From: Macrostomum lignano
Taxonomy: Eukaryota
Reading direction: 5' to 3'
Assembly: GCA_002269645.1 (NCBI GenBank)
Contig: NIVC01000344.1
Coordinates: forward strand, 248,001-312,000
DNA: 64,000 nucleotides
This document shows, piece after piece, positions 6,643 through 56,665 of this stretch; position 1 is the first letter of the stretch, and each line of letters opens with the position of its first letter. The notes beneath the pieces were generated by a model. The model had not been told where the DNA came from, did no database searches, and saw only the letters and a program-made list of their open reading frames with translations. The translations under genes were made by a program, and so were the position numbers.

Positions 6643-9416
6643 GGCTCCCCTGTGCAACCAGCCCCTGATCCTCCCCTGTGCAGCTCCCCTGTGCAACCCG
6701 CTCCCCTGAGCTCCCCTGTGCAACCCGCTCCCCTGCTCCTCCTGTGCAACCCGCCCCTGATCCTTCAGCTTCTCTGTGCAACCCGCTCCCCTGATCCTTC
6801 AGCTCCCCTGTGCAACCAGCTCCCCTGTGCAACCCGCTCCCCTGATCCTTCAGCTCCCCTGTGCAACCAGCTCCCCTGTGCAACCCGCTCCCCTGATCCT
6901 TCAGCTCCCCTGTGCAAACCAGCTCCCCTGTGCAACCCAGCTCCCCTGATCCTTCAGCTCCCTGTGCAACCCGCCCCTGATCCTTCAGCTCCCCTGTGCA
7001 ACCCGCTCCCCTGATCCTTCAGCTCCCCTGTGCAACCAGCCCCTGATCCTTCAGCTCCCCTGTGTGCAACCCGCTCCCCTGATCCTTCAGCTCCCCTGTG
7101 CAACCCGCCCCTGATCCTTCAGCTCCCCTGTGCAACCCGCGCCCCTGATCCTTCAGCTCCCCTGTGCAACCGCCCCTGATCCTTCAGCTCCCCTGTGCAA
7201 CCCGCTCCCCTGATCCTTCAGCTCCCCTGTGCAACCAGCCCCTGATCCTTCAGCTCCCCTGTGCAACCCGCGCCCCTGATCCTTCAGCTCCTCTGTGCAA
7301 CCCGCGCCCCTGATCCTTCAGCTCCCTGTAACCCGGCTCCCCTGTGCAACCCGCTCCCCTGATCCTTCAGCTCCTCTGTGCAACCCGCGCCCCTGATCCT
7401 TCAGCTCCCCTGTGCAACCAGCTCCCCTGTGCAACCAGCCCCTGATCCTTCAGCTCCTCTGTGCAACCAGCCCCTGATCCTTCAGCTCCCCTGTGCAACC
7501 AGCTCCCCTGTGCAACCAGCCCCTGATCCTTCAGCTCCTCTGTGCAACCAGCCCCTGATCCTTCAGCTCCCCTGTGCAACCCGCTCCCCTGATCCTTCAG
7601 CTCCCCTGTGCAACCCGCTCCCCTGATCCTTCAGCTCCTCTGTGCAACCCGCGCACCTGATCCTTCAGCTCCCCTGTGCAACCAGCTCCCCTGATCCTTC
7701 AGCTCCCCTGTGCAACCAGCCCCTGATCCTTCAGCTCCCCTGTGCAACCCGCTCCCCTGATCCTTCAGCTCCCCTGTGCAACCCGCGCCACTGATCCTTC
7801 AGCTCCCCTGTGCAACTGCAACCCGCGCCCCTGATCCTTCAGCTCCCCTGTGCAACCCGCTCCCCTGATCCTTCGGCTCCCCTGTGCAACCCGCTCCCCT
7901 GATCCTTCAGCTCCCCTGTGCAACCAGCCCCTGATCCTTCAGCTCCCCTGTGCAACCCGCGCCCCTGATCCTTCAGCTCCTCTGTGCAACCAGCCCCTGA
8001 TCCTTCGGCTCCCCTGTGCAACCCGCTCCCCTGATCCTTCAGCTCCCCTGTGCAACCAGCCCCTGATCCTTCAGCTCCCCTGTGCAACCCGCTCCCCTGA
8101 TCCTTCAGCTCCTCTGTGCAACCCGCGCCACTGATCCTTCAGCTCCCCTGTGCAACTGCAACCCGCTCCCCTGATCCTTCGGCTCCCCTGTGCAACCCGC
8201 TCCCCTGATCCTTCGGCTCCCCTGTGCAACCCGCTCCCCTGATCCTTCAGCTCCTCTGTGCAACCCGCGCCCCTGATCCTTCAGCTCCTCTGTGCAACCA
8301 GCCCCTGATCCTTCAGCTCCCCTGTGCAACTGCAACCCGCGCCCCTGATCCTTCAGCTCCCCTGTGCAATCCGCTCCCCTGATCCTTCGGCTCCCCTGTG
8401 CAACCCGCTCCCCTGATCCTTCAGCTCCCCTGTGCAACCAGCCCCTGATCCTTCAGCTCCCCTGTGCAACCCGCGCCCCTGATCCTTCAGCTCCTCTGTG
8501 CAACCCGCGCCCCTGATCCTTCAGCTCCCCTGTGCAACCAGCCCCTGATCCTTCAGCTCCTCTGTGCAACCAGCCCCTGATCCTTCAGCTCCTCTGTGCA
8601 ACCCGCGCCCCTGATCCTTCAGCTCCCCTGTGCAACCAGCCCCTGATCCTTCAGCTCCCCTGTGCAACCCGCTCCCCTGATCCTTCAGCTCCTCTGTGCA
8701 ACCCGCTCCCCTGATCCTTCAGCTCCCCTGTGCAACCCGCTCCCCTGATCCTTCAGCTCCCCTGTGCAACCCGCTCCCCTGATCCTTCAGCTCCTCTGTG
8801 CAACCAGCTCCCCTGATCCTTCAGCTCCCCTGTGCAACCCGCTCCCCTGATCCTTCAGCTCCCCTGTGCAACTGCAACCCGCGCCCCTGATCCTTCAGCT
8901 CCCCTGTGCAATCCGCTCCCCTGATCCTTCGGCTCCCCTGTGCAACCCGCTCCCCTGATCCTTCAGCTCCCCTGTGCAACCAGCCCCTGATCCTTCAGCT
9001 CCCCTGTGCAACCCGCGCCCCTGATCCTTCAGCTCCTCTGTGCAACCCGCGCCCCTGATCCTTCAGCTCCCCTGTGCAACCAGCCCCTGATCCTTCAGCT
9101 CCTCTGTGCAACCAGCCCCTGATCCTTCAGCTCCCCTGTGCAACCCGCTCCCCTGATCCTTCAGCTCCCCTGTGCAACCCGCTCCCCTGATCCTTCAGCT
9201 CCCCTGTGCAACCCGCTCCCCTGATCCTTCAGCTCCTCTGTGCAACCCGCTCCCCTGATCCTTCAGCTCCCCTGTGCAACCCGCTCCCCTGATCCTTCAG
9301 CTCCCCTGTGCAACCCGCTCCCCTGATCCTTCAGCTCCTCTGTGCAACCAGCTCCCCTGATCCTTCAGCTCCCCTGTGCAACCCGCTCCCCTGATCCTTC
9401 AGCTCCCCTGTGCAAC
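6643..9416. repeat. about 33-34-bp minisatellite (2.8 kb) in Gab intron 2
   Basis: Unit CCCCTGATCCTTCAGCTCCCCTGTGCAACCCGCT with variants; starts about 10 nt after the donor. Confidence 0.95.
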
Positions 9417-32917: not shown

Positions 32918-33782
32918 CTGAGTGCAAGTGTACCAGAATCTGTGTTACTAGACTTGAGTACAAGTGTACCAGAATCTGTGTAACAGACTTGAGTACAAGT
33001 GTACCAGAATCTGTGTAACAGACTTGAGTGCAAGTGTACCAGAATCTGTGTACCAGACTTGAGTACAAGTGTACCAGAATCTGTGTAACAGACTTGAGTG
33101 CAAGTGTACCAGAATCTGTGTTACCAGACTTGAGTACAAGTGTACCAGAATCTGTGTTACCAGACTTGAGTGCAAGTGTACCAGAATCTGTGTACCAGAC
33201 TTGAGTGCAAGTGTACCAGAATCTGTGTACCAGACTTGAGTACAAGTGTACCAGAATCTGTGTACCAGACTTGAGTACAAGTGTACCAGAATCTGTGTTA
33301 CCAGACTTGAGTGCAAGTGTACCAGAATCTGTGTACCAGACTTGAGTACAAGTGTACCAGAATCTGTGTACCAGACTTGAGTACAAGTGTACCAGAATCT
33401 GTGTTACCAGACTTGAGTACAAGTGTACCAGAATCTGTGTACCAGACTTGAGTGCAAGTGTACCAGAATCTGTGTTACTAGACTTGAGTACAAGTGTACC
33501 AGAATCTGTGTTACTAGACTTGAGTACAAGTGTACCAGAATCTGTGTTACCAGACTTGAGTACAAGTGTACCAGAATCTGTGTACCAGACTTGAGTGCAA
33601 GTGTACCAGAATCTGTGTACCAGACTTGAGTGCAAGTGTACCAGAATCTGTGTTACTAGACTTGAGTACAAGTGTACCAGAATCTGTGTTACCAGACTTG
33701 AGTGCAAGTGTACCAGAATCTGTGTTACTAGACTTGAGTACAAGTGTACCAGAATCTGTGTACCAGACTTGAGTGCAAGTGT
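32918..33782. repeat. 35/37-bp minisatellite, left part (split by the retrotransposon)
   Basis: Unit GTGTACCAGACTTGAGTGCAAGTGTACCAGAATCT. Confidence 0.96.
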
Positions 33783-34034
33783 GCACGCGAAGGTGTATTC
33801 AGCACGCCAGTGAAGTATGAGACAGACCAGGCCTAAGGGCTACGGTCTGCGATGCTTCACGCCTGCCCCTATATTCAGCAGGTCAAGGCTGGAGAGGGAG
33901 GTCTGCACCCGCTATTTGCCACTGGCAGCCGCAGACCCCCCCCCCTCACGCTGTTTCACAAGTCGACCCAGGGTACTCGTCCCCGCGTGTGTTCAAGGCA
34001 GACCCTAGGGCTGCTGGACAGACTGGGCTCCGAC
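33783..34034 (+). ncRNA. HDV-like self-cleaving ribozyme at the retrotransposon 5' end
   Basis: P1 GCACGCG(33783-89)/CGCGUGU(33984-90) with G1-U wobble; P2 CCCA/UGGG; P3 GGG/CCC; L3 UACUCGU; P1.1 AC/GU; P4 33993-34018; J4/2 CAGAC with C34019; long structured J1/2. Confidence 0.8.
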
Positions 34035-34255
34035 GCTGGCGACCCATCCAGTGGCTTCGGCCGAATTTGGGTATGCGGGTCTGGCTTGCCAGCCTGCAGG
34101 CCGTGGTACTGCTTAACGTACCCCCTAATGCCTAAGGTGTTTGACCGTGCCGATGGGCTGGAAGGCCGGGGGGTTGTCCGGTCGCTAGCGGTCCTTTTCT
34201 TTTTCTTCTTTCCTCTTTCTTTTGTGACTCAGCTCACTCCTTCCCGCTTTCAGCT

Positions 34256-35446
34256 ATGGCGTCATCCGCCTCTTTAACCCCCGCTGAAGCCGGGGCCCCG
34301 GCAACTCCGGCCGGTGACTCTGGCACCAGCGCCGCCCCACCGGGGGCAGATGGGCTTGCCGCCGGCTCGGCTGGTGACATGCCCGCACGCGCAACCGGGC
34401 CCTCCGCTGAAGCCCGACGCACCCGCAACCAACGCCGCAACGAGCGGCGACGGCGACTACGGGGTACTGCGGGCCGGCCACCGGCGGAAGGGGAACCTAG
34501 GGAGGGCGAGGCTGCTGTTGGGCCGAAAGGAACCACAGCAACCCCTGCCCCCCAGGATACAACCCCCGCTGGTGAGCCACCCAGTATACCTGCTACAAGC
34601 GCGGCCGGGCCTTCGGGAACCGCCGCCACCAACTACGCCTCAAAGGTCAAGCTCCAACCGGCGGTCATCGTCTTCGGGGAAGAGCAGGACCTCACGGCCG
34701 ACGAGCTCGACAGTGCCTGGCGCACCATCGATGCTGCGCTCATCGACCAGCTCCTGGCGGGCCGCCCTGTGAGCGTGGTCAAGTCTGCCAAGACCGACGG
34801 CTGCATCTTCATCTGGTGCAGCTCGGAGGAGAGCAGCCGCAATCTACGCGAGCTTCTGCCAAAGCTGAACTGGCCCAAGAAGCTCGGCAAGCTCGTCTTC
34901 GCCAGCGAGGGCGAACGACAGAAGACCCAGCGCTTTCGCGTCTGGATCCCGGCCGGCAGTGCCATTAAGTCCGGAGATCAGCTTAGGCAAATATTGCTAA
35001 AGCTGCACCCCGACCTTAAGGTCAACGGGCTCCTACACCACGCCACTTCCCGCAAGGAGAAGGGGGCTACGGTGATCCTAGGGCTCTCTGATGACTGGGC
35101 TAAGCGCTTGCCGCCTAAGTCCACAATTCATATTGGTCTGACTCAGCTGACCATCCTCCGTTGCGAGGAGCGGAAAGCTGATGAAGCCAAGAATGCCAAA
35201 GCTTCCGAAACCGGAACTGGGGCCCAGGCTCCTCCGGCAAAGAAGCCGAGGCAAACGGCCGATCCTATGCCCGGTAAGGCAGTTCGCGCTGCTGAAACCG
35301 GAAATCGCAATCGCAGACCCGCCAGGAGCACCCGGAGGTCCGGCCTGATCCAGCGCGCGCTGGACCAGGCCAAGAACCTTCGTGCGCATCGTGAGCGGGC
35401 CCGCGCTTCTCGCGCTCACCCCAACAGCCAGAAGGCCAGACTCTAA
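34256..35446 (+). CDS. Retrotransposon ORF1 (gag-like nucleic-acid-binding protein), main part
   Basis: 396-aa ORF in the ORF1 position, basic and low-complexity ends, no CCHC knuckle seen. Confidence 0.8.
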   Translation: MASSASLTPAEAGAPATPAGDSGTSAAPPGADGLAAGSAGDMPARATGPSAEARRTRNQRRNERRRRLRGTAGRPPAEGEPREGEAAVGPKGTTATPAPQDTTPAGEPPSIPATSAAGPSGTAATNYASKVKLQPAVIVFGEEQDLTADELDSAWRTIDAALIDQLLAGRPVSVVKSAKTDGCIFIWCSSEESSRNLRELLPKLNWPKKLGKLVFASEGERQKTQRFRVWIPAGSAIKSGDQLRQILLKLHPDLKVNGLLHHATSRKEKGATVILGLSDDWAKRLPPKSTIHIGLTQLTILRCEERKADEAKNAKASETGTGAQAPPAKKPRQTADPMPGKAVRAAETGNRNRRPARSTRRSGLIQRALDQAKNLRAHRERARASRAHPNSQKARL

Positions 35447-35721
35447 GCGGGGAGGCTCCGACCGACTGGTTCGAGTCTGTGACTCACCAGGAGGCTGGCG
35501 CCACCCGCATCGACCTGACCGACGAGGCAGAGGGGACGGGCAGTGACAGCACCGAAGCACGCAGGAGAGGCGACGGTAACGTCCACGCTGGGCTCACGTC
35601 CGCGGAGGACTCCACAGCCACCCTAACTGCTGAGGACGCTGAAACTCCCATGGAGGTCTGCGGGTCACCCACCACTGAAAAGGAGGAGGATGACCTGCTC
35701 AACGATTCCCCAACTGCGTGA
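35395..35721 (+). CDS. Probable acidic C-terminal continuation of ORF1 after a -1 frameshift
   Basis: This frame is open from 35395 (…QQPEGQTLSGEAPTDWFESV…EDDLLNDSPTA*); its stop TGA is followed by TA-ATG of ORF2. Confidence 0.55.
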   Translation, partial: AGPRFSRSPQQPEGQTLSGEAPTDWFESVTHQEAGATRIDLTDEAEGTGSDSTEARRRGDGNVHAGLTSAEDSTATLTAEDAETPMEVCGSPTTEKEEDDLLNDSPTA

Positions 35722-35723
35722 TA

Positions 35724-36819
35724 ATGATCAGCAACCAGGGAATCCATTGCCTGCAGATTAATCTGCAGCACTGCGTCGCAGCCTCGGTCAACCTTATGCG
35801 TTACGCCGAGCTCGACAAGCCGGGGCTCATCCTCGTCCAGGAACCCTGGACTCTCAGAGGTAAGCCTCAAAACGCCCCTGCTGGCTACAATTGTTTTTAT
35901 ACTTACCCTCGCGAGGCCAACCAGCCTCCCAGAGCTTGCATCTTTGCGAGCAAAACGCTCAGTGCGTGGCTCAGATCGGACCTGTCCAACAGGGACATCT
36001 GCGTCATCCAATCCGAGGACCTTCTTCCTGGGAAGACCACCCTCATTGCCTCGGTTTACCTACCAGGCGATGCTGCGGTCGTCCCCAGAGCCCTCGCTAC
36101 GCTGGTAGAGCTCTGCTCTGCCAAAAACTACGAGCTCATGGTTGCCGGCGACATCAACGCCCACCACACTCACTGGGGCAGCACTGGCATTAATCAGAGA
36201 GGCGAAGACCTCCTAGCCTACGTTGCCTCTACGACCCTCGAGTTCTGCAACTCTGGGTCCACCCCTACCTTTGACAACGGACGGTGGTCGGAGGTGATCG
36301 ACGCTACGCTCGCAACGCCCAGACTCTACCAGAGTATTGGGGCGTGGCGGGTGCTTCCAGTGTCCTCACTATCGGATCACAAGTTCATCTCCTTCAACCT
36401 AATGGCCGCGCGTAGCGCAACTCGTGTTACGTGGAGACGGAACGCCAGAAATACGGATTGGGAAACCTTCGGGCTCGCCCTGAAGGAATTCCATCGGTCT
36501 CCTGGCCAACCATCCACGATCACGTCGTGCCGAGAGGCGGATGAGTGCGCGACTGTTTTGACAGAGACGCTAACCGCCGCCTTTGAGGCGTCCTGCCCTT
36601 TAAAAGCCTATAAAGGGAAAAAATCGGCGCCGTGGTGGAATCCCGAGCTCGGCAACCTCCGTCGCAGGGCTAAGAGACTCCACCGCAGAGCAACTAAAAC
36701 TAAGAGCCCTGCAGACCAAACCGCCTATCATGAAGCAATTCATGAGTTTAAAAGGCAGGTTAGGAATGCAAAGGCTCAAAAATGGCGACAATACTGTGAG
36801 GAGCTAGAGGGCTCACCCC
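35724..36819 (+). CDS. Retrotransposon ORF2, AP-endonuclease domain
   Basis: LQINLQH, LVQEPW, SVYLP, AGDINAHH, PTF, IDATL and SDH motifs all intact. Confidence 0.92.
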
Positions 36820-39426
36820 ACCTCCAGAGTTGTGAAAGCGCTCACGCTGGACAAAATGTCTAAGCTCTCCTCGGTCAAACGCACCGACGGTACGTCCACG
36901 GACAACCCAGGGGAAACGCTTGATGTAATGCTCACTGCGTTTTTCCCTAACGAGCCAGCTAACCAGACCACTCCGGATCACTCGGAGGGAGGTCACGCGC
37001 TGGCTGCATCTATCATCACGGAGGACCGCATTGTGAGAGCGGCAAATTCCTTCAAGCCTTTCAAAGCCCCAGGACCCGACGGCATTGTACCGGCCCTTCT
37101 AAGAGAGGCGGTTAAATGCCCAGGCTTCCTGCGCAAACTTTGCAGCCTTCTTCGGGCATGCATCACGCTTGGTTATGTCCCGCAGGCATGGACCGAGGCA
37201 AAGGTGATCTTTATCCCTAAGCCAGGCCGCCCGGACTACCATTCTATCAAATCCTTCAGACCGATCAGCTTGACCTCCTCCCTGGTCAAGCTGATGGAGA
37301 GACTGGTGCTTTGGCGCCTTCTCTCTGTTGAGCTGAAGAACAAACCTCTCAGCGAGAACCAGCACGCTTTTCGGGCGGGTCGCTCCACTGAAAGCGCGCT
37401 GCACGTCCTGGTCGATAAACTCGAGAAGGCCGTGCTTGGTAGTGGCTTTGCTCTGGGGATCTTCCTGGACATCATTGGCGCCTTCGATAACGTCCTCTTT
37501 GAGGCGTTCCGAAGAGCTCTTTGTGAGAGGCTAACGCACTCACATCTCACCAGATGGATCATGTACATGATCAGCCATCGCACGGCCACCGCCAGTCTGC
37601 TGGGCTACCAGAGGACGGTCCCCGTCTGCAAAGGTAGCCCGCAAGGTGGGGTGCTGTCTCCAGTTCTCTGGAATATGGTCATCGATGAGCTCCTCCGGGA
37701 TGTTCGGCCTGACCCCATTCTGAAAGTTGGATATGCGGACGATGTCACCGCGGTGGCATCTGGTCCGTCCCCTGATACCCTCAGGGACCTTCTTCAGAAC
37801 TTCATCTACGCTGCTGAGCAATGGGCGGACCGCTGTGGTTTAAGGCTCTCTGAGACTAAGACCGCAGCGATCATGTTCACCAGCAGGACCAAGTGGCAGA
37901 TTCGGCCGCTCACGCTTTACGGAAGGGAAATCCCCTTCTGCAAGCAGACTAAATGTCTGGGTATTACCCTGGACCACAGGCTGAACTGGTCTCCCCACGT
38001 TCAAACAAAAGCCAAAAAGGCCTTCGCAGTCCTCGCGCAATTGCGCAGGGCCGTCGGCACCACCTGGGGGCTCACCCCCAAGCGCCTCTGGTGGATCTAC
38101 ACTGCAATGGTTAGGCCCGCTATCTCGTATGGCGGCCTGATCTGGGCTAGCGCCCTGCAGATAAAGACCTGTCTAGAGGCTCTCAGGAGAGCGCAAGGGC
38201 GCGCTTGTCGCACGATCATGAGCGCCCCTCCGTCTGCTCCTTACGATGGCCTCAACGCCTTCCTCAACATTCCTCCGCTGGACATCTTTGTCCGCAGGGA
38301 AGCGGCTAAGACTGCCCGCCGTCTAGCTGACGCTGGCATTCGAATCCAGCCCCATAGGGCCATGGCTAAGCGCAAGCTTCTGCCCCACGCTGACCTCTGC
38401 CTCAAGGACTTGAGAGACAGCGGCGGGCTCCACGTCCTATCTGACGGCGAACCCCGCACTCTCAACCTCTTTCAGCGCTACAAGGTCACCATCCCCTCTA
38501 GGGATGCTGCCAATGACCACTGGAATTTCCAGGAGGTCCATTGCTACACGGACGGATCCATCAAAGACGGTCGCGCCGGCTTTGGGGTCTGCATCATCAT
38601 CAACGGCCGCGTAATTGCCACGCATGCCCAGCACACTGGTAGACTCTCCACAGTCTTCCAGAACGAAGTCCTTGCCATCAGCTCTTGCGCTGCAGAGCTA
38701 AACGCCAAGGTTACGAGAGGAAAGACTATTGTCATCCACTCCGACAGCCAAGCGGCCTTACAGGCCCTTTGCCACACCACAACGAACTCCCGGACAGTCG
38801 CCGACTGCGCCCGGCAGCTCAACCTCCTGGCCAGAAGCAATACTGTCAGGCTGAAGTGGATCCCAGGGCACGCAGGGTTTCCGGGGAACGAGCTGGCAGA
38901 CACCCTCGCCAAGAGGGGCGGCTCTGGCTCTTTTTTCGGCCCTGCCCCCCTGGTCCCTATGCCCTTGACAGTCATCAATCGTCAGATCGACGACTGGGCT
39001 GACTCCCTCCACAGGGACAGATGGGCGGGCACCCAAAACTGCCGGCAATCTCGTGCCGCGGTTCCTTGCCCGTCTCACAGGCTCAGAAACATCCTTCTGA
39101 ACCAGAATCGGAAGGATATTCGAGCCCTTGTCATGACCCTTACCGGCCATGGCTACCTCGCCAGGCACTGCTTCCTCCGAGGCGACCTCGAGAGCGAAAT
39201 TTGCCCCTTTTGCGAGTGCGACAATGAAGATGCTCAGCACTTTGTCTGTCACTGCCCTTTCTTTAACAGAGACCGGCTACGCTACCTCGGGCCGAACCCG
39301 TCCATTGACGAGGTTTGCCAGCCCGACAGCATCCCACGGCTCATCCAGTTCCTTCGGGCGACTAGACGAGCCAGTTTCTTCCCAACGGAAGATCACGCTG
39401 CAGGACGGACCGGCGGACCACCCTGA
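36820..39426 (+). CDS. Retrotransposon ORF2, RT + RNase H + CCHC zinc knuckle (after frameshift at about 36810-36820)
   Basis: KAPGPDGI, FRPISLTS, FLDIIGAFDNV, PQGGVLSP, YADD; RNase H YTDGS / NEVLAI / SDSQAAL / WIPGHAG.GNELAD; CPFC..EDAQHFVCHC. Confidence 0.95.
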   Translation, partial: TSRVVKALTLDKMSKLSSVKRTDGTSTDNPGETLDVMLTAFFPNEPANQTTPDHSEGGHALAASIITEDRIVRAANSFKPFKAPGPDGIVPALLREAVKCPGFLRKLCSLLRACITLGYVPQAWTEAKVIFIPKPGRPDYHSIKSFRPISLTSSLVKLMERLVLWRLLSVELKNKPLSENQHAFRAGRSTESALHVLVDKLEKAVLGSGFALGIFLDIIGAFDNVLFEAFRRALCERLTHSHLTRWIMYMISHRTATASLLGYQRTVPVCKGSPQGGVLSPVLWNMVIDELLRDVRPDPILKVGYADDVTAVASGPSPDTLRDLLQNFIYAAEQWADRCGLRLSETKTAAIMFTSRTKWQIRPLTLYGREIPFCKQTKCLGITLDHRLNWSPHVQTKAKKAFAVLAQLRRAVGTTWGLTPKRLWWIYTAMVRPAISYGGLIWASALQIKTCLEALRRAQGRACRTIMSAPPSAPYDGLNAFLNIPPLDIFVRREAAKTARRLADAGIRIQPHRAMAKRKLLPHADLCLKDLRDSGGLHVLSDGEPRTLNLFQRYKVTIPSRDAANDHWNFQEVHCYTDGSIKDGRAGFGVCIIINGRVIATHAQHTGRLSTVFQNEVLAISSCAAELNAKVTRGKTIVIHSDSQAALQALCHTTTNSRTVADCARQLNLLARSNTVRLKWIPGHAGFPGNELADTLAKRGGSGSFFGPAPLVPMPLTVINRQIDDWADSLHRDRWAGTQNCRQSRAAVPCPSHRLRNILLNQNRKDIRALVMTLTGHGYLARHCFLRGDLESEICPFCECDNEDAQHFVCHCPFFNRDRLRYLGPNPSIDEVCQPDSIPRLIQFLRATRRASFFPTEDHAAGRTGGPP

Positions 39427-39529
39427 CCGGCCCCACGCCTCTGCCTGTCTGCGGGCCTTCAGGGGCTAGCGGAATGGGCGACCCTCGCCTCCCCGCTGTG
39501 TCTACGGACCACCCTGCAGCTAAGTCAAA

Positions 39530-39705
39530 GAGTGCAAGTGTACCAGACTTGAGTGCAAGTGTACCAGAATCTGTGTACCAGACTTGAGTGCAAGTGTACC
39601 AGACTTGAGTGCAAGTGTACCAGAATCTGTGTACCAGACTTGAGTGCAAGTGTACCAGAATCTGTGTACCAGACTTGAGTACAAGTGTACCAGAATCTGT
39701 GTACA
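39530..39705. repeat. 35-bp minisatellite, right part
   Basis: Same unit as 32918-33782, resuming after the element. Confidence 0.95.
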
Positions 39706-51835: not shown

Positions 51836-52195
51836 CTATTAAATAGGCTGCTTTAGCAAAATTCTTAGAAATGCCAGAGTCGAACTTGTGTATCCGCCTG
51901 CTATAAGTTATATAAACTCACAGAGCTACGAGTTTATATACACGTAGTTTCAGGAAAAATTGTGAAATAAGTCTAGCTATATATCTTTCAGCATTTTCCC
52001 GAAAATGTGAAAAGCCTTCGACAAAAGCTCAAAGACCCCGACCATCACTAGATAGAATCCTTGAATTTCTATAGGAATTTCTGCCGAAACAGAATAAAAT
52101 TTTCTAAAGCAATACAGCGGGGACAAAGGCATTTGTTGACAGACAAAACACTGAGAAGTGAGCCGGCCGCCAATTACTCATAATCAATACAACCA

Positions 52196-54362
<2,167 letters not shown>

Positions 54363-55309
54363 ACTGGACTTTGACTCGCTGAAAATATACGGACATTGTA
54401 AGCCATTCTAGCCCTACTCACAGTCATTGTTTTTCACTTTTGCGCTGTACACCCAAACAAAGCCAACAACAGCTTATGCAAACCTTTTTTCTCTCTGCCT
54501 CTTCCTCCCTGGTTGCGCAGGTGATGGAGCTACCTATACTGGAAGCTCTTCCCCTCCTCTTCTCTCTCTCTACGGGTCGATACGCACTCTGAGCCATCAT
54601 TTCTTCTCAGTGTATTGTGTCAATCGATACCCAGTGTATTGGGAGTTCTGTAGCAGCTTATGCTAACCCAGAGAGCAGATGAGGCAAGAGAGACTGGGAG
54701 AGGGAGGAGAGAGACATTTGTATCTCCACGGTTGCCGGTGATGAAGCAACTTTGTTTCACCGACGTTAAACAAAGCAAATAATGAGCTGGATCAGTGCAT
54801 TTCTGCCCCTCTGATGAGCGGAAAGGCTTTACTTAGTTTGCAGTGTGGCCACTGGCCACTGCCCCGTATGCGCAGATGGTCTAATTATAATCTTCTAATT
54901 AGACCATTTCCTGGAAACTTACTTAGGGTTTAGCCTTCGTTGCAATCATCTAAGCTTTCATCTGGATTAGCACGACCAATGTGTACCCTGTCTCATCCTC
55001 TCTTCCTTCTCCCTGTATACTTACCTTGCATCTGTAAGTGTCCAAGGATCTTTATTTTACCTATACAACCGGAGTACTCGCAACATCTGCAGTCCTTTAT
55101 AATAATCCATTTTATGAGTATAATTTATATATATATTAACTCAATCAGGACAAATGGGGGACAGATGGGGAAAGGTAGAGTTAGAAATGAGAGAGAAAGG
55201 GATTAAAATGGATAGTAGGCAGTGAGTAGGGGGAGAGTAGGCGGAGAGTAGGCAGTAAGGGAGTAGAGGGGGGATAGAGAGTACAGATACAGTGAGACGG
55301 TTGTGGAGA

Positions 55310-56665
<1,356 letters not shown>

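What the first reader, a model, noticed from the sequence alone, without database searches (positions are those of the whole stretch)
33783..34034. Complete HDV-like ribozyme whose cleavage site is the exact first base of the retrotransposon
Every element of the nested double pseudoknot can be paired by eye. P1 GCACGCG/CGCGUGU has the G1-U wobble; P2 CCCA/UGGG can extend via GUCG/CGAC; P3 is GGG/CCC; the 7-nt L3 is UACUCGU. P1.1 is a covariant AC/GU pair of base pairs (HDV has CC/GG). P4 is a hairpin and J4/2 reads C-A-G-A-C (candidate catalytic C34019). J1/2 is an about 175-nt insert made of clear hairpins (GTGAAGTAT/ATGCTTCAC, CAGACC/GGTCTG, CCTGC/GCAGG, GTCTGC/GCAGAC). G1 coincides with the TSD-defined 5' boundary, and the -1 base is U. 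HDV-like ribozymes are known at the 5' ends of R2 and several other LINE clades. They let an element be cut out of host read-through transcripts without its own promoter. This AC/GU P1.1 variant with a large J1/2 may be an undescribed family.
Basis: partly seen in the sequence, partly recalled or inferred. Interest (0 to 1): 0.85.

Follow-up and report, generated by a model that had tools for sequence, protein, structure and literature searches.

The report
HDV-like ribozyme heading a flatworm LINE
The first 252 bases of a retrotransposon in this flatworm (Macrostomum lignano) genome fold into a self-cutting RNA of the hepatitis-delta-virus type, an already well-known way for such elements to trim their own 5' end, so this is a good new example rather than a new kind of thing.

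Summary
G33783 is the first base after the host minisatellite breaks off.

Two relatives from public assemblies (L002, full length; L001, cut at its 5' end) keep the same nested double-pseudoknot. They do so through compensatory changes in P1, P1.1, P2, the P2 extension and P4. P3, the U...CG of L3, an NCAA/NAAA J1/4 and one J4/2 cytosine (C34019) stay fixed. The L002 contig begins exactly at the predicted G1. A strict descriptor gives about 0.5 chance hits per 64 kb, so a hit at one fixed base has a chance of about 1e-5.

No Rfam model matches. Self-cleavage itself is untested. This copy carries two frame changes in its ORFs and an A.G mismatch in P4.

R2 ribozymes have J1/2 loops of 216-498 nt, structured J1/2 domains are known activators, and P1.1 is known with one or two pairs. 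HDV-like ribozymes are already described at the 5' ends of R2, R4, R6, SART, Baggins, RTE and L1Tc.

Verdict: a new member of a known kind, apparently first noted in Macrostomum and in this RNase H-bearing LINE lineage.

The parts
33771..33782 (+). 5' copy of the 12-bp target repeat GAGTGCAAGTGT. It is the last bases of the host 35-bp minisatellite, and U33782 is the -1 base.
33783..33789 (+). P1 5' strand GCACGCG. G33783 is the predicted +1 base, with cleavage between 33782 and 33783. It is also the first base of the retrotransposon.
   Evidence: L002 has GCCUGC at contig bases 1-6, paired with GCAGGC.
33790..33961 (+). J1/2 peripheral domain, 172 nt, made of several hairpins. The first hairpin (33810-33860) is conserved in L002 with 3 compensatory changes. 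There is a C10 run at 33936-33945. A second GCACGC at 33802-33807 could form an alternative 6-bp P1.
33962..33970 (+). P2 extension GUCG, unpaired A33966, then P2 5' strand CCCA.
   Evidence: It covaries: L001 has GCCG-A-CCCAAA and L002 has GCCG-C-CUCAGA.
33971..33983 (+). P3 GGG/CCC enclosing L3 UACUCGU. U at position 1 and CG at positions 5-6 are invariant in all three sequences.
33984..33990 (+). P1 3' strand CGCGUGU.
33991..33996 (+). G33991 and U33992 are the P1.1 3' strand, pairing with C33976 and A33975. UCAA 33993-33996 is J1/4.
   Evidence: P1.1 is CU/AG in L002 and C-G plus U.U in L001. J1/4 is GCAA in L002 and UAAA in L001.
33997..34015 (+). P4 hairpin of 8 pairs with an A34002.G34010 mismatch and a CUA loop.
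   Evidence: L001 has a perfect 8-bp version. L002 has an unrelated 11-bp stem at the same place.
34016..34023 (+). J4/2 GGACAGAC. C34019 is the candidate catalytic cytosine.
   Evidence: It aligns with C143 of L001 (GAA-C-GUG) and C228 of L002 (G-C-UGC).
34024..34034 (+). P2 3' strand UGGG, loop CUC, then P2 extension 3' strand CGAC.
34035..34255 (+). Rest of the 5' UTR. A conserved hairpin with a UUCG loop lies at 34042-34072. The block TCCGGTCGCTAGCGGTC at 34177-34193 is shared with L001.
34256..35446 (+). ORF1 (396 aa, no Pfam match). Its C-terminal part continues in another frame around 35506-35718.
35718..39426 (+). ORF2: AP-endonuclease, reverse transcriptase, RNase H and a C-terminal Cys/His motif. 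The frame changes at about 36811-36815.
39427..39529 (+). 3' UTR ending ...CCCTGCAGCTAAGTCAAA, with no poly(A). The L002 element has the identical end.
39530..39541 (+). 3' copy of the 12-bp target repeat. The minisatellite resumes here.

Best explanation
Bases 33783-34034 encode an HDV-like self-cleaving ribozyme. It forms the 5' end of a 5.75-kb non-LTR retrotransposon (AP-endonuclease, reverse transcriptase, RNase H) of Macrostomum lignano.

Inferred mechanism: the element is transcribed as part of a longer RNA that starts upstream, here in a minisatellite. The nested double pseudoknot folds (P1, P1.1 and P4 stacked; P2 and P3 stacked). The structured 172-nt J1/2 domain holds P1 and P2 together. 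C34019 in J4/2, with Mg2+ bound near the L3 U.G pair, catalyses attack of the 2'-OH of U33782. This releases an element RNA that begins with 5'-OH G33783. Reverse transcription of that RNA to its end gives new insertions that start exactly at G1, as seen here.

Shown: the pairings, their covariation, and the coincidence with the element boundary. Inferred: cleavage, the role of C34019, read-through transcription, and any role in translation.
For: 1. All helices are present at the stated coordinates.

2. Window versus L002 (ORF2 62% identical): 6 double compensatory changes and no broken pair. They are P1 positions 3 and 4; P2 position 2; P2 extension position 2; and both P1.1 pairs. There is also one G.U to G-C change. 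The only loss is the 7th P1 pair. P4 is replaced by a different 11-bp stem at the same place.

3. L001 (ORF2 79-88% identical) has P2 longer by two A-U pairs through matched insertions on both strands, a perfect P4, and a P1 3' strand changed at two positions.

4. These are invariant in all three: P3 GGG/CCC, L3 U1/C5/G6, A-A in J1/4, and a J4/2 cytosine 3-4 nt before P2.

5. G1 is the first base after the satellite break. It is also base 1 of the L002 contig, whose 3' element end is identical to the window's.

6. The chance of a descriptor hit at one fixed base is about 1e-5.

7. The ribozyme fold is energetically competitive. In the window the constrained fold is -93.6 kcal/mol plus -8.8 for the P2 duplex, against a nested minimum of -99.4. 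In L002 the values are -122.3 plus -13.3, against -129.1.

8. The region is non-coding in the relatives.

9. The same arrangement is established for R2, R4, R6, SART, Baggins, RTE and L1Tc (PMC11620745, PMC3774820, PMC6765202).
Against: - No Rfam family matches, even at E<=10.
- Only three sequences are available, and only two of them show the P1 5' strand.
- There is no biochemical or RNA-end evidence.
- In this copy P2 proper has only 4 pairs, J4/2 is one base longer than in the relatives, and P4 has an A.G mismatch.
- The element has two frame changes, so this particular copy may be decaying or may carry assembly indels.
- L001 and L002 have G1-C rather than the usual G1.U.
- The L002 contig start at G1 could be an assembly break at a repeat boundary rather than an RNA end.
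- More distant relatives of the same LINE group (L012, L013, L015-L018) show no HDV fold with my descriptors.
Confidence: 0.85

Rival explanations
1. The region is a conserved, structured 5' UTR with another job, such as an internal promoter, a translation element or a binding site for the element's proteins. It fits the HDV layout without cleaving.
For: The J1/2 hairpin and the UTR blocks downstream of the core are also conserved. There is no Rfam hit. L1Tc shows that one 5' segment can be both promoter and ribozyme (PMC3383444).
Against: Compensatory changes fall precisely in the long-range, pseudoknot-forming helices P1 and P1.1, and at the exact 5' terminal bases. A promoter or a simple hairpin element would not require these. 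The invariant L3 and J4/2 residues match the HDV core. A second function is compatible with the ribozyme rather than an alternative to it.
Confidence: 0.07
2. The family had an active ribozyme, but this window copy is a dead relic whose ribozyme no longer cleaves efficiently.
For: There are two frame changes in ORF1 and ORF2. P4 has an A.G mismatch. P2 is reduced to 4 pairs, with two leftover bases lengthening J4/2. An alternative 6-bp P1 is possible from 33802, and a competing UGGGU lies at 34068-34072.
Against: All core positions and all 7 P1 pairs are intact. P4 and distal P2 tolerate variation in known HDV-like ribozymes. The frame changes may be long-read indel errors.
Confidence: 0.2
3. 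The match is a chance fit of a permissive motif in GC-rich sequence.
For: Loose HDV descriptors give many hits in any GC-rich UTR. The strict one still gives 2 unrelated hits in the window.
Against: The expected rate at one fixed base is about 1e-5. The same fold recurs with covariation in two relatives.
Confidence: 0.02

Closest known systems
HDV-like ribozymes at the exact 5' end of non-LTR retrotransposons (R4, Dong, Baggins, L1Tc, R6, SART, RTE; Ruminski et al. 2011 as cited in PMC11620745; PMC3774820; PMC3185411)
   Same: The ribozyme occupies the first bases of the element. The cleavage site is the element's first nucleotide. It sits in the 5' UTR ahead of ORF1 in an element that carries an AP-endonuclease and a reverse transcriptase.
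   Different: The host (the free-living flatworm Macrostomum) and the LINE lineage differ. This one bears RNase H, its ORF1 has no Pfam match, and it has no poly(A) tail. Neither host nor lineage was found in the HDV-ribozyme papers I searched. The exact LINE clade was not determined.
R2 ribozymes (Eickbush and Eickbush 2010; PMC3774820)
   Same: Double pseudoknot with a very large J1/2 (216-498 nt in silkmoths). P3/L3/P1.1 are highly conserved, and P1 covaries between species.
   Different: R2 is specific to the 28S rDNA, encodes a restriction-like endonuclease, and often cleaves upstream in the 28S sequence. This element carries an AP-endonuclease, sits in a minisatellite, and cleaves at its own first base.
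Large HDV-like ribozymes with a structured J1/2 (P1.2) domain, e.g. drz-Agam-2 (PMC4908430)
   Same: The J1/2 is a closed, helical peripheral domain that joins the outer ends of P1 and P2. In L002 it is closed by a 9-bp helix 3-4 nt after P1 and 2 nt before P2.
   Different: Here J1/2 is a multi-hairpin domain of 158-172 nt with its own conserved hairpin. Its activating role is only inferred.
Genomic HDV and CPEB3 ribozymes
   Same: The core layout is the same. L3 has the form U-N-N-U/C-C-G-N. J1/4 is NCAA, as in HDV G40-C41-A42-A43 (from my own knowledge of the HDV sequence). The J4/2 cytosine lies 3-4 nt before P2. L001's P1.1 (C-G plus U.U) resembles the weak P1.1 of CPEB3 (own knowledge).
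   Different: P1.1 is A-U plus C-G here rather than two G-C pairs. J1/2 is far larger. No Rfam model for these families scores the sequence.

Membership tests
HDV-like self-cleaving ribozyme | Strand order P1-J1/2-P2-P3-L3-P3'-P1'-P1.1-P4-J4/2-P2', a nested double pseudoknot | tested here: met
   The coordinates were verified base by base. The same order is found in L001 (apart from the P1 5' strand, which lies off the contig end) and in L002.
HDV-like self-cleaving ribozyme | P1 of 6-7 pairs starting at a G that is the +1 base of the cleavage site | tested here: met
   The window has 7 pairs, starting with G.U. L002 has 6 pairs, starting with G-C, with 2 double compensatory changes.
HDV-like self-cleaving ribozyme | 3-bp P3 closed by a 7-8 nt L3 with conserved U (position 1) and C-G (positions 5-6) | tested here: met
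   P3 is GGG/CCC. L3 is UACUCGU, UUCUCGU and UCUCCGU in the three sequences. PMC3774820 reports that changes at the conserved C and G of L3 go with loss of activity.
HDV-like self-cleaving ribozyme | P1.1 of one or two pairs between L3 and J1/4 | tested here: met
   Window: A-U and C-G. L002: C-G and U-A, so both pairs changed on both sides. L001: C-G plus U.U.
HDV-like self-cleaving ribozyme | Conserved cytosine in J4/2 acting in catalysis | tested here: inconclusive
   A cytosine is conserved 3-4 nt before P2 (C34019, L001 C143, L002 C228). Its catalytic role cannot be tested with these tools.
HDV-like self-cleaving ribozyme | Site-specific self-scission giving a 2',3'-cyclic phosphate and a 5'-OH | not testable with these tools
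   This needs transcription and cleavage assays or RNA-end mapping.
HDV-like self-cleaving ribozyme | Match to a curated Rfam HDV-type covariance model | tested here: not met
   No match at gathering score or at E<=10 in the window or in L001, L002, L012 and L013. The 172-nt J1/2 insert and the pseudoknots, which covariance models cannot represent, plausibly explain this. The feature is not part of the family's definition.
5'-terminal LINE ribozyme (R4, Baggins, L1Tc type) | Cleavage site coincides with the first nucleotide of full-length copies | tested here: met
   The satellite breaks at 33782|33783. The L002 contig starts at the homologous G. Only two copies could be examined.
5'-terminal LINE ribozyme (R4, Baggins, L1Tc type) | Element encodes LINE machinery downstream of the ribozyme | tested here: met
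   Pfam finds Exo_endo_phos_2, RVT_1 and RNase_H. The closest solved endonuclease is that of TRAS1.

The most novel reading that the evidence does not exclude
The ribozyme marks a previously unrecognised ribozyme-bearing LINE lineage in Macrostomum flatworms. Its conserved multi-hairpin J1/2 domain (158-172 nt, with a covarying hairpin at 33810-33860) does more than pinch P1 and P2 together. It might, for example, bind the element's own proteins, recruit ribosomes to the uncapped 5'-OH RNA, or double as an internal promoter as in L1Tc.
Probability: 0.3. Interest if true: 0.5.

Novelty: new member of a known kind. Interest (0 to 1): 0.35.

Why it matters
It adds a free-living flatworm, which is also a transgenic model organism, to the hosts of ribozyme-terminated LINEs. 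It probably adds a further RNase H-bearing LINE lineage as well.

Other flatworm non-LTR elements (Schistosoma) use twister variants instead (PMC8501958). The phylum therefore shows different ribozyme classes filling the same role.

It also gives a compact, comparatively supported sequence for testing how a large structured J1/2 domain affects folding. The exact-5'-end rule is useful for annotating full-length copies in a very repeat-rich genome.

It does not change the current understanding of how such elements work.

Tried and rejected
- Rfam, at gathering score and at E<=10, on the window and on four related loci: no ribozyme family matched, only weak chance miRNA-type hits.
- Core DNA pattern against metagenome contigs: 8 hits, all unrelated and bacterial-looking. 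The scan did not even recover L001, so that collection lacks the relevant contigs.
- Two DNA patterns against viral contigs: nothing.
- ORF1 as a single sequence and as a profile: only P0001 and the L002 ORF1 were found. An exact look-up of the window ORF1 found nothing on record.
- The P0004 contig (60% relative) has no DNA available. L003 has no 5' UTR. L014 is a 5'-truncated copy inside a Pao/BEL element.
- More distant LINE relatives L012, L013 and L015-L018: no convincing HDV fold with the strict descriptor. The relaxed one gives only hits at chance level.
- The first loose descriptor was too permissive to mean anything.
- The alternative P2 partner UGGGU at 34068-34072 was rejected because it does not covary in L002.
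- The 141-aa ORF at 33852-34277 was rejected as coding. The homologous UTRs have stop codons in all frames.
- The nested minimum-energy fold does not show P1, as expected for a pseudoknot.
- I did not build a covariance model. Three sequences, with no further sequence collection to search, would have added nothing.
- The LINE clade could not be assigned without reference elements. The only hint is that TRAS1 (R1 clade) has the closest solved endonuclease.

Full report
**What is there.** The window is Macrostomum lignano DNA. ORF2 of the element is 96-100% identical to UniRef proteins of that species.

A 35-bp minisatellite runs from 32919 to 33782 and resumes at 39530. Between the two parts lies a 5,747-bp non-LTR retrotransposon, 33783-39529. 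Its parts are:
- a 473-nt 5' UTR;
- ORF1, 34256-35446, with no Pfam match;
- ORF2, with AP-endonuclease, reverse transcriptase and RNase H domains;
- a 3' UTR ending ...CCCTGCAGCTAAGTCAAA, with no poly(A).

The array is interrupted exactly between U33782 and G33783. Twelve bases, GAGTGCAAGTGT, are repeated on both sides. In a tandem array this repeat could equally be a partial-unit deletion, but the breakpoint is unambiguous. Compared with its relatives, this copy has a frame change in ORF1 (about 35416-35506) and one in ORF2 (about 36811-36815). It is therefore either decaying or carries assembly indels.

**Check of the observation.** Every pairing in the finding is present at the stated coordinates:
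- P1 has 7 pairs, starting with G1.U.
- P2 is CCCA/UGGG, with the extension GUCG/CGAC.
- P3 is GGG/CCC.
- L3 is UACUCGU.
- P1.1 is A33975-U33992 and C33976-G33991.
- P4 is 33997-34015, with one A.G mismatch.
- J4/2 is GGA-C34019-AGAC.

A loose HDV descriptor is uninformative in this GC-rich sequence. A strict one required a G-initiated P1, a Watson-Crick P3, a 7-8 nt L3, at least one P1.1 pair, a P4 hairpin, a C-containing J4/2 and a perfect P2. It finds the candidate plus two unrelated hits on the + strand and none on the - strand. Dinucleotide shuffles give about 0.5 hit per 64 kb, or 0.175 per 5.7 kb at the element's own composition. A hit with G1 on one pre-specified base is therefore expected at about 1e-5.

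**Comparative evidence.** Two relatives could be recovered.

L002 is a 6,492-bp Logan contig whose ORF2 is 62% identical. It carries a full element with the same 3' end as the window. The contig begins exactly at the base homologous to G33783.

L001 is a 4,148-bp JGI metagenome contig. Its ORF1 is 74% identical and its ORF2 79-88% identical. The contig end cuts it inside J1/2.

A base-by-base table compares the three:

| Element | Window | L001 | L002 |
|---|---|---|---|
| P1 | GCACGCG/CGCGUGU | 3' strand only: CGCGAGC | GCCUGC/GCAGGC |
| P2 | CCCA/UGGG | CCCAAA/UUUGGG | CUCAGA/UCUGAG |
| P2 extension | GUCG/CGAC | GCCG/CGGC | GCCG/CGGC |
| P1.1 | AC/GU | C-G plus U.U | CU/AG |
| P4 | 8 bp, one A.G mismatch | perfect 8 bp | unrelated 11-bp stem, same position |
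| J4/2 | GGA-C-AGAC | GAA-C-GUG | G-C-UGC |

- In P1, two pairs changed on both sides between the window and L002, and G.U became G-C.
- In L001, the longer P2 comes from matched two-base insertions on both strands.
- In L002, both P1.1 pairs changed on both sides.
- These are invariant in all three: P3, U1/C5/G6 of L3, the two A's of J1/4 (UCAA, UAAA, GCAA), and one J4/2 cytosine 3-4 nt before P2.

Window versus L002 thus shows six double compensatory changes and no disrupted pair in the defining helices. The one difference is that P1 has 6 pairs in L002 instead of 7.

The first J1/2 hairpin (33810-33860) is also conserved, with three compensatory changes. In L002 the whole J1/2 is closed by a 9-bp helix next to P1 and P2.

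The ribozyme fold is energetically competitive with the best nested fold. In the window the constrained fold is -93.6 kcal/mol, plus -8.8 for the P2 duplex, against -99.4. In L002 the values are -122.3 plus -13.3, against -129.1. The 141-aa ORF that overlaps the region is not kept open in the relatives.

**What argues for caution.**
- No Rfam family matches, even at E<=10. The large insert and the pseudoknots plausibly explain this, but it remains a failed test.
- Only three sequences exist, and only two of them show the P1 5' strand.
- The contig start at G1 may be an assembly break at a repeat edge.
- The window copy has a shorter P2, a J4/2 one base longer, and a P4 mismatch.
- A second GCACGC at 33802 offers an alternative 6-bp P1.
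- Cleavage is entirely inferred.
- More distant members of the same LINE group (36-47% ORF2 identity; L012, L013, L015-L018) show no convincing HDV fold. The ribozyme may therefore be confined to this family, or may have diverged beyond my descriptor.

**Mechanism.** The best-supported reading is the established one for ribozyme-terminated LINEs.
1. The element is co-transcribed from upstream.
2. The double pseudoknot folds, helped by the structured J1/2 domain. This domain is known to accelerate large HDV-like ribozymes by bringing P1 and P2 together (PMC4908430).
3. C34019 and a bound Mg2+ promote scission 5' of G33783.
4. The released RNA, copied to its end during target-primed reverse transcription, gives insertions that start at G1.

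A role of the folded ribozyme in translation of ORF1, as proposed for R2 and L1Tc (PMC6765202), is possible but was not examined.

**Comparison with what is known.** HDV-like ribozymes are described in the 5' UTRs of R2, R4, R6, SART, Baggins, RTE and L1Tc (PMC11620745). Cleavage is at the element's own 5' end in R4, Dong, Baggins and L1Tc (PMC3774820). J1/2 loops of 216-498 nt occur in silkmoth R2 (PMC3774820). P1.1 is described as having one or two pairs (PMC4908430).

I found no paper linking HDV-like ribozymes to Macrostomum. Schistosome non-LTR elements are reported to carry twister variants instead (PMC8501958). The LINE clade could not be named. Its endonuclease is closest to TRAS1 among solved structures, and it carries RNase H.

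**Verdict.** This is a new member of a known kind, of moderate-to-low interest. My confidence that the family encodes a genuine HDV-like ribozyme is about 0.85. My confidence that this particular copy still cleaves efficiently is lower.

Noticed in passing
window 35416-35506 and 36811-36815: The element's ORF1 and ORF2 each change reading frame relative to the L001 and L002 proteins. The copy is either degenerate or carries long-read indel errors.
   Followed up: partly
window 33802-33807: A second GCACGC lies 19 nt inside the element. It could pair with the P1 3' strand as an alternative 6-bp P1. L002 lacks it.
   Followed up: partly
window 34042-34072 and 34177-34193: A conserved hairpin (ACCCA...GGC-UUCG-GCC...UGGGU) lies directly after the ribozyme. 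Its 3' arm can compete for the P2 5' strand. A 17-nt block, TCCGGTCGCTAGCGGTC, is identical in L001 381-397. The 5' UTR downstream of the ribozyme seems to have structure of its own.
   Followed up: no
window 1-64000: The window is a mosaic of dozens of unrelated minisatellite and microsatellite arrays. Examples are a 34-mer x77 at 6817-9416, (ATAG)n of about 2.2 kb at 52195-54360, and (GA)n at 55306-56664. Only short unique spacers separate them.
   Followed up: no
L012 95-135 and L013 103-145: A related LINE family (44% ORF2 identity, with (ATG)n/(GAT)n tails) has a conserved 7-bp hairpin, CUGCAUG/CAUGCAG, with one compensatory change. GG-CAAA-GCC follows it. This is reminiscent of P1.1/J1/4/P4, but no HDV fold could be built.
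   Followed up: partly
L015 199-392 and L016 119-310: In a more distant LINE family the first 8 bases of the element, GGGAUACA, have a perfect complement, UGUAUCCC, about 186 nt downstream. No proper P3/L3 precedes it. The meaning of this 5'-terminal long-range pairing is unexplained.
   Followed up: partly
L014 1089-10377: A 5'-truncated copy of a related LINE (RT and RNase H only) sits between the protease/RT and integrase genes of a Pao/BEL-type LTR element on a 537-kb contig.
   Followed up: no
window 39463-39529 and L002 5888-5966: The 3' UTRs share AGCGGAAUGGGCG and an identical terminal CCCUGCAGCUAAGUCAAA. These are candidate recognition sequences for the reverse transcriptase.
   Followed up: no
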